63,173 bases of DNA, filler included, from Ministeria vibrans ATCC 50519 (GCA_943704425.1; 11 parts of 11 records of this genome joined end to end with filler, not necessarily neighbours in it); one strand, 5' to 3'; counted from the whole stretch's first letter, positions 48,887-52,006 are shown. Program-made: numbers and translations. Notes: a model not told the origin generated them from the letters alone.

Positions 48887-48938
<52 letters not shown>

Positions 48939-49065
48939 AGTGATAGAGAGAGAGAGTGAGTGGGTAAAAATCGGAGAAAAGAGTGGGGTTATTAGTGTGT
49001 AAATGGGTGATGGATGAGTGAGTGTAACTGTAAGTAAAATGTCTTATTATATGAGCTGCTCTTAC

Positions 49066-50143
49066 TTGACTGAATCTGAGGATCAACTGATAGTGGTGCA
49101 AGAGAGCGGCTGTGGCGTGTTCGTCGGTGCCCGCCAGTGCTCTTTGTGCAACACCACTTGCGTCTAATGACGTGGTACCGGCGCTTTTTGTTTGAGAGTG
49201 GAATTCGTAGAGCACTGAGAGTCCTCTTCCGCTGCAAATGTCGTCCCACTCCAGTGATCGGGATGGAATGCGCTTGGCGTAGTATTTAAGAAAGTCCTTT
49301 TCTTCTGGCATCCAATGAACGCTAAACAAGGAGCGAGAGACGGGAGATAGGGGTAAAGGTAAGAAGGTCAACACATCACTCAACGCCCTCACGCAACCCC
49401 TTACTTGCAGTGCCCTCCTTCCAACGGAAGCACCGAAAAGCCCGTCCCGTTGCCCACGAGCATTGCATTTCCAAGACCCGTTCCCACCGCAATAATAAGA
49501 TGATTATGACGCGGATCCAGTTGTGTGGCGTTGAGTCCATCGTGTCCGGCCCATTCCTTCAGAATTCAGAGGTTCACTTCACTGTCTCAGTCTGTCTCAG
49601 TCTCAGTCTGTCTCTCTCCCGACAATTGTACCAGCTTAAAATAATCCTGAAGCTTGTTCGTTTGACACAGCCCACTGACAGCGTGGCACACACCAACGAG
49701 GTCGTTCATGAGACACGATCGGCCCGACGGAACAAGTGCGGCAGGAAAGTCGGCCAATGAAAACGCACAGCTCTCTACACGCCAGTCAGGAACGACGTCT
49801 GTGCCCACCCCCGCCCACCAATCCATCGTACCTTGATCGAAGTTGGCAATGGCAAGGCACACGTTGTTGTCGCAGGGACCTGGGGCGCAGAATGAAGCAG
49901 ATTCGATCTGTCGCTCGCCCAAATCTGTTTCCACCTGCTTCATCGCCTCAACGAGTCCCCGTGCGCTGCTCACCTCAAACCTCCACTACTCAACGACCAC
50001 GCATGGAATCCAAGGTAAATGCGCAGTCGAGCGAGCTCTGGTTCGTTTGTTTCGGGTACACTTTGGATGATTTTCTCGTTGGGCATTTCACGGAGCTCAA
50101 CGCGCGTGTACGTCCCGCCCACGTCGCCAACAAGAACAAGCAT
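49066..50143 (-). CDS. Glucokinase (Glk type), multi-exon, 3' truncated
   Basis: LVGDVGGTYTRV; APGP; LMNDL; VGTGLG...LPLEGGH; EWDDICSGRGL. Confidence 0.85.
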
Positions 50144-50539
50144 GGCTCAAAACAACACAAGAATCGTGTTGGTGTGCACCGTGGCTCAACCCACTCAACA
50201 AAGTTGACAATGTCAAAAAATATCTAATCACTTCTATATCTAAATAATATCACTGATCTGAAGGATTAAAATTAATCACTCAAACTATCAAAGAGAAACA
50301 GTCTTCATGGAAAAATAAGCTACTGCAGCCTGTCTACATTTTGCATTGCTGATTATAGAGTAACTACAGCCCATCGGACTCACTTTGAAATATCAATGTT
50401 CGGCCGTTTCTGCTTACGCTAAGTGGATAATACGCACGAATGTATTCACTCTATCCCTCTCTCAACATCGCACTTCGTACATAACAGCTGTACACGCTGT
50501 CCCACGCCAAAGAAAGAAAAAAACCATCTCAAAGATATC

Positions 50540-51121
50540 TCAGGAACATGTTCCCCACGCTGGACGGGACAGTGTCCATGCGAGGGTAGAGGTGTCAAAG
50601 TTCACAGGAGTGGAAGCAATGTTATCCACACACCAGGCTTTGAGGCTATAAAGAGAGAGAGAGAAAGAGATCAGAAAAACAAAGATATATATATGTATTA
50701 TATTTGTGGTTAATATTTTAGGGGAGGTGAAAAGTCTTACTTTTGATTGAAATTGCTCGCAAAAGCAAACATGCTCGTCATATCAGTCACACTCTATATA
50801 TGCAATATCAGAATTATTATTATTATAATAATAATAATAATTATTATTATTATTATATGATAGTGTCTGTGTCTGCTTTTTTGTACCGAAGTGTCAAAGG
50901 AAAGCGGTTGATTGAATGATGTTGCAGAGGAAAACATTGAAGACATGTCAAGCACACTCTGTAAATGGAAAAGAAAAGAAAGAGCGGCCAATGCAGGAGA
51001 GAGATTGAGTATACACCTGCCTCACAAAACAATATGACTGTGCATTACTTCGGTATTGAGATGAAGAGGTTGATTGAATTGTGTCGCAGTATGAAACATG
51101 GCTTTCATACTAGTCACTCGC

Positions 51122-51201
<80 letters not shown>

Positions 51202-51554
51202 AGACAGGGGAGAGAGAGAGAGGAGAAAGAAACAAAGTGATAAAGAGCGAGAAAGAGAAAATTCAATACAAAAAAGAGAGAAAGAGAAAATTTAATACAA
51301 GAAAACATGTTTCTGTTGTGGTTTTTTGTGTGCTTACTGAAGAATTGAAGCTCAAAGGTTGATTGAATGAAACTGCAGAGTGGAACATTTCTGCCATATC
51401 AATTGCACTCTGAATATCATCAAACGTTAGTAAAGCGAATAATATTCAGCTTGGGAAGAGACGCTCAATCCAATAATCTAACCTGAGTGTTAAAAGAGAT
51501 GGGTTGGTTGAAATTCGTAGTAGCTCGAAACATTGAAGTGAACACAGCCACGTT
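50540..51554 (-). CDS. DUF285/BspA-type repeat protein, 3' part; one repeat per 72-nt exon
   Basis: Exons 51483-51554, 51338-51409, 51049-51120 and 50887-50958 (72 nt each), then 50741-50793 and 50540-50645; all introns GT-AG; repeats xVxDMxxMFxxAxxFNQPLxFxT; C-cap NLKAWCV..I.S.P.NF...W...RPAWGTCS*. Confidence 0.9.
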
Positions 51555-51693
51555 CTATTGCGAACAGAGAGAAAGAAAAAAGAAAAGGGTGAGATAGAGA
51601 TTTTTGAAAGACTGAGTGGCAGAATGCTTGTTTGATTGATAAAGAGAAAGAAAGAAAAAAAAAAAGAAAGAAAGAAAGGAAGAGGAAGAGGGA

Positions 51694-51796
<103 letters not shown>

Positions 51797-52006
51797 AGTG
51801 ATAGAGAGAGAGAAGAAATACTCTTCTTTTGTTATCTTTTTTTTACTTCATCATTCTATTTCATATATTCTATTCTTAAAATATTTATTTCATGTTTCTT
51901 CATTTANNNNNNNNNNNNNNNNNNNNNNNNNNNNNNNNNNNNNNNNNNNNTTAATTAATTAANNNNNNNNNNNNNNNNNNNNNNNNNNNNNNNNNNNNNN
52001 NNNNNN

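What the first reader, a model, noticed from the sequence alone, without database searches (positions are those of the whole stretch)
50540..51554. Bacterial-type DUF285/BspA repeats laid out as 72-nt phase-0 cassette exons: candidate exon-shuffling variable-receptor system
Seen: four consecutive minus-strand exons are each exactly 72 nt, bounded by AG/GT in phase 0, and each encodes one 24-aa repeat (NVAVFTSMFRATTNFNQPISFNTQ, SAIDMAEMFHSAVSFNQPLSFNSS, RVTSMKAMFHTATQFNQPLHLNTE, SVLDMSSMFSSATSFNQPLSFDTS). A capping exon pair follows, ending WCV..I.S.P.NF...RPAWGTCS. The framework (MF, A, FNQP) is fixed, the other positions vary, and the introns (73, 217, 90, 93 nt) look unrelated. Only one repeat shows in the ORF track, buried in a junk ORF. 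Established: this repeat and C-cap are typical of bacterial DUF285/BspA surface proteins, and one-repeat-per-exon LRR arrays are known in Ectocarpus ROCO genes and Tetrahymena 90-nt-exon LRR genes. Inference: a bacterial adhesin repeat was acquired and modularised so that any exon can be skipped, duplicated or swapped in frame, giving a diversifiable prey/pathogen-recognition surface. I know of no such description for DUF285.
Basis: partly seen in the sequence, partly recalled or inferred. Interest (0 to 1): 0.88.

Follow-up and report, generated by a model that had tools for sequence, protein, structure and literature searches.

The report
One-repeat-per-exon DUF285 gene in alga
This is the expressed 3' end of a marine alga's gene for a DUF285/BspA-type leucine-rich-repeat protein in which each 24-residue repeat sits on its own 72-base exon; the gene layout is real and tidy, but nothing here shows that it works as a diversity-generating receptor system.

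Summary
On the minus strand, four consecutive exons (51554-51483, 51409-51338, 51120-51049, 50958-50887) are each exactly 72 nt, phase 0 and bounded by AG/GT. Each encodes one 24-aa repeat. They are followed by a split fifth repeat and a C-cap (50793-50741, 50645-50540). Assembled transcripts from three RNA-type runs in two studies carry exactly these junctions, with a poly(A) tail at about 50414. They continue 1.0-1.5 kb upstream of the piece, into another repeat that also ends at phase 0.

Each 72-nt exon alone hits only Pfam DUF285. The C-cap is 52-62% identical to caps of DUF285 proteins retrieved from public metagenome assemblies, and the same cap motif occurs in hits that NCBI names as bacterial.

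DUF285 is already known as a multi-copy, highly transcribed family in phytoplankton. The exons here are only 46-67% identical in nucleotides, so the duplications are old. All transcript contigs show one constitutive isoform, and samples show no differences inside the piece.

The best reading is ancient tandem duplication of an exon-intron unit in an LRR-solenoid surface or secreted protein gene. Two other algal DUF285 loci carry 5-10 repeats in one exon, so this layout is a lineage- or gene-specific variant. Interest is moderate to low.

The parts
51555..51906 (-). Partial intron upstream of E1, rich in (CT)n and poly-pyrimidine. The next upstream exon is not in the piece.
   Evidence: RNA contigs run on beyond 51554 into sequence that is absent from the window. 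Tandem repeats are listed.
51483..51554 (-). Exon E1: 72 nt, phase 0-0, one 24-aa DUF285 repeat
   Evidence: PF03382 at 16.2 bits is the only hit. The RNA joint 51409|51483 is seen.
51410..51482 (-). Intron 1, 73 nt, GT..AG
   Evidence: The joint is seen in X10, X8 and X12.
51338..51409 (-). Exon E2: 72 nt, phase 0-0, one repeat
   Evidence: PF03382 at 18.0 bits. RNA contig pieces.
51121..51337 (-). Intron 2, 217 nt. It holds a 29-nt tandem duplication and a long (CT)n tract that runs into the 3' splice site.
   Evidence: It is implied by the RNA contig coordinates; the joint row itself was dropped at the repeat.
51049..51120 (-). Exon E3: 72 nt, phase 0-0, one repeat
   Evidence: PF03382 at 21.1 bits. 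The joint 50958|51049 is seen.
50959..51048 (-). Intron 3, 90 nt, GT..AG, with an in-frame stop if retained
50887..50958 (-). Exon E4: 72 nt, phase 0-0, one repeat
   Evidence: PF03382 at 22.7 bits. RNA contig pieces.
50794..50886 (-). Intron 4, 93 nt, AT-rich with (ATT)n, with an in-frame stop if retained
   Evidence: It is implied by the RNA contig coordinates.
50741..50793 (-). Exon E5: 53 nt, the first 17 residues of a fifth repeat, ending in phase 2 inside the codon after FNQ
   Evidence: The joint 50645|50741 is seen.
50646..50740 (-). Intron 5, 95 nt, GT..AG
50540..50645 (-). Exon E6, coding part: the C-terminal cap (WCV...P.NF...RP.WGTC type) and the TGA stop at 50542-50540
   Evidence: It is 62% identical to the cap of P0215 and 52% to that of P0089. 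The cap motif occurs in 33 of 371 retrieved DUF285 proteins.
50414..50539 (-). 3' UTR, about 126 nt, with the poly(A) addition site near 50414
   Evidence: The X8 contig carries a 25-nt homopolymer tail at 50414. The other contigs end at 50417-50420.
49066..50191 (-). Neighbouring gene on the same strand: a bacterial-type glucokinase. Exons are 50191-50060, 49985-49832, 49774-49631, 49555-49405 and 49321-49066, and the gene continues off the piece.
   Evidence: RNA joints. Frames are consistent across the junctions. PF02685 hits on three exons. Atlas lead.

Best explanation
The piece holds the last 148 codons and the 3' UTR of an expressed, spliced, polyadenylated nuclear gene of a marine eukaryotic alga. 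A diatom is a weak lead only. The gene encodes a DUF285 ("BspA-family") leucine-rich-repeat-like solenoid protein of at least about 500-640 residues.

Shown: each of the last four complete repeats, and the end of a fifth one just upstream of the piece, is one 72-nt symmetric phase-0 exon. The array ends with the conserved DUF285 C-cap and a stop, with no C-terminal anchor.

Inferred: the array grew by old tandem duplications of an exon-plus-intron unit. An intron sat at the repeat boundary of the founder unit, and the copies then diverged to 46-67% nucleotide identity, with introns that are now unrelated. The exons are spliced constitutively. Each exon contributes one coil of the solenoid, with the MF..A..FNQP framework in the core and the variable positions on the surface. 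The protein most likely acts as a secreted or surface-exposed binding scaffold, like other members of this family, whose function in phytoplankton is still unknown. The cassette layout permits in-frame gain or loss of repeats over evolutionary time, but it is not shown to be used as a diversification mechanism.
For: Exon and intron anatomy.

Transcript contigs from three runs in two studies carry exactly these junctions and a poly(A) tail. They extend about 1008 nt (X10) to 1480 nt (X12) upstream. The upstream exon ends in ...FNQTLSFDTS at phase 0.

Family: each exon hits PF03382 alone. A profile built from the exon repeats retrieves 23,020 representative proteins. The best-ranked relatives found through them carry PF03382 and are named BspA-family LRR surface proteins. 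The C-cap is conserved.

Fold: an algal relative with the same 24-aa repeat (P0367) models at pLDDT above 90 over its repeats, and all 50 best PDB matches listed are LRR proteins, with Z up to 11.2.

Old duplication: exon pairs are 46-67% identical in nucleotides, and the introns share only microsatellites.

Stability: no other letters and no alternative joints were seen in any run across the piece.

Family context in algae.
Against: The 5' two-thirds of the gene lies outside the piece. The signal peptide, any anchor or signalling domain, the total repeat number and the exon layout of the rest are therefore unknown.

The transcript evidence comes from assembled contigs, which drop rare isoforms, so exon skipping is not excluded.

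Whether the introns were inherited by unit duplication or gained in parallel is inferred from parsimony only.

The fold evidence comes from a homologue, not from this protein, because the spliced model was not joined.

Organism identity rests on a weak lead and on run labels such as seawater or algae metagenome.
Confidence: 0.7

Rival explanations
1. Active cassette-exon diversification. The 72-nt phase-0 exons would be skipped, duplicated or exchanged, by alternative splicing or by frequent recombination between paralogues, to generate a variable recognition surface, as proposed for the Ectocarpus ROCO and NB-ARC-TPR genes.
For: Consecutive phase-0 exons of identical length, each one repeat, are the criterion used to flag candidate shuffling loci in Ectocarpus. 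Framework positions are fixed and the others vary. One S/P difference was seen between runs at a non-framework position of the upstream exon. Some algal DUF285 proteins are receptor-like, for example P0125, which has a GPS-like motif and transmembrane helices.
Against: Exons within the locus are only 46-67% identical in nucleotides, so there are no recent copies and no conversion. Three transcript assemblies give the same full isoform, with no skipping joints. No sequence differences appear across the piece between samples labelled as two organisms. No signalling domain is seen, and the protein ends right after the C-cap. A fixed core with a variable surface is what any solenoid repeat shows.
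Confidence: 0.1
2. Parallel intron gain. An originally intron-poor repeat array, of bacterial type or like other algal DUF285 genes, would have acquired introns independently at the same point of successive repeats, rather than inheriting them through duplication of an exon-intron unit.
For: Two other algal genomic DUF285 loci carry 5-10 repeats in one exon, with introns elsewhere. The cap is of the type seen in bacterial proteins. The introns here are unrelated in sequence and length. Three introns in the piece carry the same (CT)n-associated motif, so insertion of repetitive DNA does occur in this genome.
Against: At least five insertions at exactly the same codon boundary would be needed. 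The exon ends (CAG, TCA, GAA, TCG) and exon starts show no common proto-splice site. Introns 1, 3 and 4 lack the shared motif.
Confidence: 0.12
3. Artefact: a mis-assembly, bacterial contamination or a pseudogene, with chance AG/GT boundaries.
For: The piece is a short contig that breaks in microsatellites. Its last 85 nt have discordant RNA and DNA depth.
Against: DNA contigs from an independent run cover the exons at normal depth. Spliced, polyadenylated transcripts match base for base. The neighbouring glucokinase gene is spliced as well. The signature is not expected by chance.
Confidence: 0.02

Closest known systems
DUF285 (Pfam PF03382), also called BspA-family leucine-rich repeat surface proteins, of bacteria
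   Same: The repeat framework is the same (..M..MF..A..FNQ.....T/S). The terminal cap is the same type (WCV...P.NF...RP.WGTC), with 52-62% identity to P0089 and P0215. Neither of those two carries an organism name, but the motif also occurs in hits that NCBI names as bacterial, such as P0356 from Nitratiruptor. The predicted fold is an LRR-like solenoid.
   Different: The usual bacterial period is 25 aa, with a Trp (FNQPI..WDTS). Here the period is 24 aa, with Phe or Leu in that place. This gene is eukaryotic, with spliceosomal introns and poly(A), and has one repeat per exon.
Phytoplankton DUF285 genes of diatoms, pelagophytes and haptophytes, and of giant viruses such as AaV
   Same: The family is the same, and so is the 24-aa FNQPLSFDTS-type repeat (P0087, P0189 from Phaeocystis antarctica, P0367-P0371). 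The family is multi-copy, highly transcribed, regulated by the environment and of unknown function.
   Different: The two algal genomic loci examined (L003 and L004, GC 0.60) carry 5-10 repeats in a single exon, place their introns after MFx, and use a different C-cap (..LLIRCAW..). No paper in the searched library describes a one-repeat-per-exon DUF285 gene.
Ectocarpus ROCO (LRR-Roc-COR) and NB-ARC-TPR genes with repeat-per-exon arrays (Zambounis et al. 2012, PMC3341825; PMC11378527)
   Same: Successive phase-0 exons of identical length each encode one repeat of a solenoid, so exon gain or loss keeps the reading frame.
   Different: The repeat family is different. No Roc-COR or NB-ARC domain is seen in the visible part. 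No evidence was found for exon exchange between paralogues, local recent duplications or alternative splicing.
TpLRR / BspA-type LRR_5 cell-surface proteins (PDB 6mlx, 4h09, 4fs7)
   Same: These are the closest solved folds to the model of an algal 24-aa-repeat relative, with Z of 10-11.
   Different: There is no detectable sequence relationship. A profile of the exon repeats finds nothing in the PDB. PF13306 is a separate Pfam family from PF03382.

Membership tests
DUF285 / PF03382 (BspA-family LRR surface protein) | Tandem repeats of about 24-25 aa that match the PF03382 profile | tested here: met
   Each of the four 72-nt exons, scanned alone, hits only PF03382 (16.2, 18.0, 21.1 and 22.7 bits). 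Each is below the 25-bit whole-protein cut-off on its own. The joined model was not scanned, by rule. A profile of the exon repeats retrieves 23,020 proteins. The best-ranked relatives found through them carry PF03382.
DUF285 / PF03382 (BspA-family LRR surface protein) | Repeat block closed by the conserved cap WCV...P.(N)F...(R)P.WG(T)C | tested here: met
   E6 is 62% identical over 34 aa to P0215 and 52% to P0089. The motif occurs in 33 of 371 retrieved family members, including named bacterial proteins.
DUF285 / PF03382 (BspA-family LRR surface protein) | LRR-like solenoid fold, one coil per repeat | tested here: inconclusive
   This was tested only on a homologue, P0367. Its pLDDT is above 90 over the repeats, and all 50 best PDB matches listed are LRR proteins, Z up to 11.2. 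This gene's own product was not folded, because the exons were not joined.
DUF285 / PF03382 (BspA-family LRR surface protein) | Secretion signal or surface anchoring | not testable with these tools
   The 5' part of the gene lies outside the piece, and the full-length protein could not be retrieved. There is no C-terminal anchor: the stop follows the cap.
Exon-shuffled repeat receptors (Ectocarpus ROCO / NB-ARC-TPR type) | Successive phase-0 exons of identical length, one repeat each | tested here: met
   Four 72-nt phase-0 exons, plus an upstream exon that ends at the same repeat boundary, all confirmed by RNA.
Exon-shuffled repeat receptors (Ectocarpus ROCO / NB-ARC-TPR type) | Recent local exon duplications, or exons shared or reordered between paralogues | tested here: not met
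   Within the locus, exon pairs are only 46-67% identical in nucleotides. Comparison between loci is not testable, because no other genomic DNA of this organism is available. A two-exon signature scan of JGI metagenome contigs found nothing.
Exon-shuffled repeat receptors (Ectocarpus ROCO / NB-ARC-TPR type) | Alternative splicing or exon skipping that yields variant arrays | tested here: inconclusive
   Only the full isoform appears in the contigs of three runs, with no skipping joints. Contigs cannot show rare isoforms.
Exon-shuffled repeat receptors (Ectocarpus ROCO / NB-ARC-TPR type) | Repeat array fused to a signalling module (Roc-COR, NB-ARC, kinase or TM) | tested here: inconclusive
   There is none in the C-terminal 148 residues. 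The N-terminal part is unseen.

The most novel reading that the evidence does not exclude
In this alga, DUF285 genes may have been rebuilt into arrays of interchangeable 72-nt phase-0 cassette exons. Alternative splicing or recombination between paralogues would then produce a variable repertoire of LRR-like surface or secreted binders. That would be a protist counterpart of the exon-shuffled candidate immune receptors of brown algae, built from a repeat family whose function in phytoplankton is an open question.
Probability: 0.1. Interest if true: 0.75.

Novelty: new variant of a known kind. Interest (0 to 1): 0.35.

Why it matters
DUF285 is the only domain of unknown function among the 100 most transcribed Pfam families of ocean diatoms, and it is expanded in several phytoplankton lineages. 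How its arrays grow and vary is not known. A member whose repeats are each a symmetric 72-nt exon shows one concrete route for changing repeat number in frame. It also gives a simple genomic signature, a spike of 72-nt phase-0 exons, that can be counted across algal genomes. If the layout proved family-wide, with exon exchange or skipping, it would point to a recognition function. If it is confined to this gene, it is an ordinary case of tandem exon duplication.

Tried and rejected

2. An exact 32-nt anchor from E6, and a two-exon "repeat-GT-intron-AG-repeat" signature, both gave 0 hits in the JGI metagenome contigs. This says little, because the eukaryotic content of that collection is unknown.

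3. Three attempts to retrieve the full-length product of this gene all failed. The attempts were P0087's repeat region, an alignment of P0081 with the single exon peptides, and an alignment of a junk carrier ORF with the exon peptides. No returned protein contains any exon peptide exactly.

5. A profile of the repeats against PDB sequences found no hit.

6. The upstream-exon end seen in RNA is not anywhere in the window.

7. BspA literature in algae refers to PF13306, not to DUF285, so it was not used as functional evidence.

8. The alternate exon pairs E2/E4 and E3/E5 are slightly more alike (0.66-0.67) than neighbouring exons (0.46-0.64), which hints at duplication of a two-exon unit. The difference is within noise for 72 nt and is not claimed.

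9. Contamination or mis-assembly was rejected for the exon array.

Full report
SCOPE. Only places 48887-51906 of the window are genomic, and all work was done on that piece. Every exon was translated and searched on its own, by reference. The joined scan (Pfam on the whole C-terminal model, or a fold of this protein) was left out.

- On the minus strand, four exons are each exactly 72 nt, preceded by AG and followed by GT: 51554-51483, 51409-51338, 51120-51049 and 50958-50887. Each translates in phase 0 into one 24-residue repeat.
- A fifth repeat is split. A 53-nt exon (50793-50741) ends two bases into the codon after FNQ. A 95-nt intron follows. The last exon (50645-50540) completes that codon and encodes a 34-residue cap, then TGA.
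- Aligning the five repeats gives invariant M, F and F-N-Q, and a consensus of the form .V.DM..MF..AT.FNQPLSF.T..
- A pattern that demands two such exons separated by a GT...AG intron matches twice here and never in 100 shuffles.
- Apart from microsatellites, the introns share nothing.

2. THE EXONS ARE USED EXACTLY AS PREDICTED.
- Twenty of the 24 listed public runs hold the stretch or a part of it.
- I laid three runs whose kind is guessed as RNA (X10 of "organism A"; X8 and X12 of "organism B", from a different study) and one DNA run (X2) on the piece.
- Each RNA-type run has one contig that is colinear with the 3' UTR, then E6, E5, E4, E3, E2 and E1. Explicit joints are seen at 50645|50741, 50958|51049 and 51409|51483.
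- The joint rows for the two introns that hold long simple repeats were dropped by the tool. The contig coordinates nevertheless leave exactly 53, 72 and 72 nt between the listed pieces, so those junctions are the predicted ones too.
- The DNA run shows none of these joints.
- The X8 contig carries a 25-nt homopolymer tail at 50414, so the 3' UTR is about 126 nt.
- All three contigs continue upstream of 51554 into sequence that is not in the window, by about 1008 nt in X10 and 1480 nt in X12. The first 30 upstream letters encode the end of another repeat (...FNQTLSFDTS) that stops exactly at the phase-0 boundary.
- The array therefore continues upstream, and the protein has at least roughly 500-640 residues.
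- No alternative joints and no differing letters were seen inside the piece. The only difference is one A/G in the upstream exon of X8, giving S versus P.
- These are contigs, so they show presence, not the absence of rare isoforms.

3. WHAT THE REPEATS ARE.
- Each 72-nt exon scanned alone against Pfam hits one family only, PF03382 (DUF285), at 16-23 bits. Each is below the 25-bit whole-protein cut-off on its own.
- A 24-position profile of the exon repeats finds 23,020 representative proteins at E<=0.001, and 2,243 at E<=1e-30.
- The best-ranked relatives retrieved through them carry PF03382, and where they have names they are called "BspA family leucine-rich repeat surface protein".
- Most relatives have a 25-residue period with a tryptophan (FNQPI..WDTS). 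A minority, both bacterial-looking and algal, have the 24-residue period seen here (FNQPLSFDTS). Examples include a Phaeocystis antarctica protein (P0189) and Tara Oceans contigs (P0087, P0367-P0371).
- The terminal exon is the family's block-closing cap. It is 62% identical over 34 residues to P0215 and 52% to P0089.
- The cap motif WCV...P.F...P.WG recurs in 33 of the 371 proteins fetched, including proteins that NCBI names from Nitratiruptor and Pedobacter.
- The haptophyte-type algal proteins use a different cap (..LLIRCAW..). In this respect the module here is of the type seen in bacteria. I did not build a tree, so the direction and date of any transfer remain untested.

4. FOLD.
- No solved structure is detectable by sequence.
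- An AlphaFold2 model of the algal relative P0367, which has the same 24-aa repeat, has pLDDT above 90 across its repeats.
- Foldseek gives only weak matches, the best at E = 0.08, and nearly all of the rows listed are LRR proteins.
- The exhaustive aligner gives Z up to 11.2, and the 50 best matches listed are all LRR proteins, such as TpLRR, gut-bacterial BspA-type LRR proteins and plant NLR LRR domains.
- One repeat is one coil. By homology, each 72-nt exon here should encode one coil of an LRR-like solenoid.

5. CONTEXT.
- About 220 nt downstream on the same strand starts a second spliced gene. Its exons are 50191-50060, 49985-49832, 49774-49631, 49555-49405 and 49321-49066, and it continues off the piece.
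- Its junctions are supported by RNA and keep one frame.
- Three of its exons hit Pfam Glucokinase PF02685. The ESM Atlas places the last exon next to bacterial glucokinase clusters and next to a eukaryotic cluster whose commonest known phylum is Bacillariophyta (a lead only).
- Together with the run labels (seawater metagenome, algae metagenome), the organism is a marine alga, possibly a diatom.

6. WHAT IS ALREADY KNOWN.
- DUF285 in eukaryotic phytoplankton is not new. It is the only DUF among the 100 most transcribed Pfam families of ocean diatoms. It has multiple gene copies in bacteria, giant viruses and phytoplankton, and it is predicted to be a solenoid (10.1101/2024.06.08.598090).
- Pelagomonas calceolata has 75 DUF285 genes, many of them regulated by light (10.64898/2026.09.29.755320).
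- DUF285 genes move between Aureococcus and its giant virus (10.1101/2024.10.30.620910).
- Repeat-per-exon arrays of phase-0 exons of equal length are the hallmark used to find exon shuffling in Ectocarpus ROCO and NB-ARC-TPR genes (PMC3341825).
- None of the 54 papers that mention DUF285, nor the 10 that mention PF03382, appears from its title or abstract to deal with DUF285 exon structure; three were read for DUF285 and say nothing on it.

7. IS IT A DIVERSIFICATION SYSTEM? The evidence I could gather speaks against an active one at this locus.
- (a) The exons are old copies. Pairwise nucleotide identity is 46-67%, and only about half to three-quarters of the codons for identical residues are the same. 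There is no sign of recent duplication or conversion.
- (b) Three assemblies from two studies give one and the same isoform.
- (c) There is no polymorphism inside the piece between samples.
- (d) The protein ends right after the cap, and no signalling module is visible.
- (e) A fixed core with a variable surface is the default for any solenoid repeat.

What remains true is that the layout is permissive: removing or adding any of these exons keeps the frame and the solenoid register.

8. IS THE LAYOUT GENERAL? Two algal genomic DUF285 loci from Tara Oceans metagenomes (L003 and L004, GC 0.60) were examined.
- L003 has about ten repeats in one uninterrupted exon, then an intron that starts GTGCGC just after "MFA", then more repeats.
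- L004 has five repeats in one exon, then an intron that starts GTACGC just after "MFK", then the cap and the next module.
- One repeat per exon is therefore not the general condition of algal DUF285 genes. Here it is a lineage- or gene-specific variant.
- The two-exon signature found nothing in 241 million JGI metagenome records. This is uninformative about frequency, because the eukaryotic content of that collection is unknown.

9. BEST EXPLANATION AND RIVALS.
- Most likely (0.7): ancient tandem duplication of an exon-plus-intron unit whose intron lay at the repeat boundary, followed by divergence. The exons are spliced constitutively, and the product is a secreted or surface LRR-like binder of unknown ligand.
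- Parallel intron gain at the same codon boundary in at least five repeats is less parsimonious, because there is no common proto-splice site and no shared intron sequence (0.12).
- Active cassette diversification is not excluded, but it has no positive support (0.1).
- An artefact is excluded for the exon array (0.02).

10. VERDICT. The family assignment is confirmed. The "variable-receptor system" is not supported. The novelty is a gene-structure variant (one DUF285 repeat per 72-nt exon) inside a known family and of a known architectural kind. Interest is moderate to low (0.35). It would rise sharply if a genome-wide survey or long-read cDNA showed exon sharing or skipping.

Noticed in passing
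window 51690-51810, 51124-51245 and 48887-48960 (minus strand): A short motif (CTCT[C/T]TATCACTTTGTTTCT) followed by a long (CT)n tract occurs three times. Each copy lies inside an intron, in the sense orientation of its gene: the intron upstream of E1, intron 2 of the DUF285 gene, and the intron after glucokinase exon 5. In intron 2 the (CT)n tract runs straight into the 3' splice site. Both ends of the piece lie in or close to such tracts, so these tracts probably break the assembly. This may be a dispersed microsatellite-associated element.
   Followed up: partly
window 51822-51906: The last 85 nt of the piece match at 100% a 2548-nt contig of run X10 that has a depth of about 5900. The DNA run X2 covers this stretch at a depth of only about 4, against about 70 elsewhere. 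This could be a chimeric contig end, a very abundant transcript or a repeat.
   Followed up: no
window 49066-50191 (minus strand): The neighbouring gene is a bacterial-type glucokinase (PF02685) with at least five exons and short introns of 57-83 nt, all supported by RNA. The 57-nt intron (49775-49831) is in frame and free of stops, so a 128-aa ORF reads through it. The gap between the DUF285 poly(A) site and the start of the glucokinase transcript is only about 220 nt.
   Followed up: partly
L003:1925-3555 and L004:3284-5730: These Tara Oceans contigs (GC 0.60) carry algal DUF285 genes with a modular build: N-cap, 5-10 contiguous 24-aa repeats, an intron after MFx, a cap of the ..LLIRCAW.. 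type, then a proline-rich linker and the next module. L004 holds a second DUF285 gene in tandem. L003 also has an in-frame tyrosine- and aspartate-rich (Y/D) simple-repeat stretch inside the array that may be another intron.
   Followed up: partly
P0125 (959 aa, Logan contig of 2908 nt): This is a DUF285 array of about 17 repeats of 24 aa, followed by a cysteine-rich region, a GPS-like motif (CSCTHLTVFAIAL) and several hydrophobic helices. It looks like an adhesion-receptor-like DUF285 protein of a eukaryote.
   Followed up: no
RNA contigs upstream of window 51554 (loose ends): The upstream exon differs by one base between X8 (Pro) and X10/X12 (Ser), at a non-framework position of the repeat. 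X8 and X12 carry the same organism label, so this is either a polymorphism or a paralogue.
   Followed up: no
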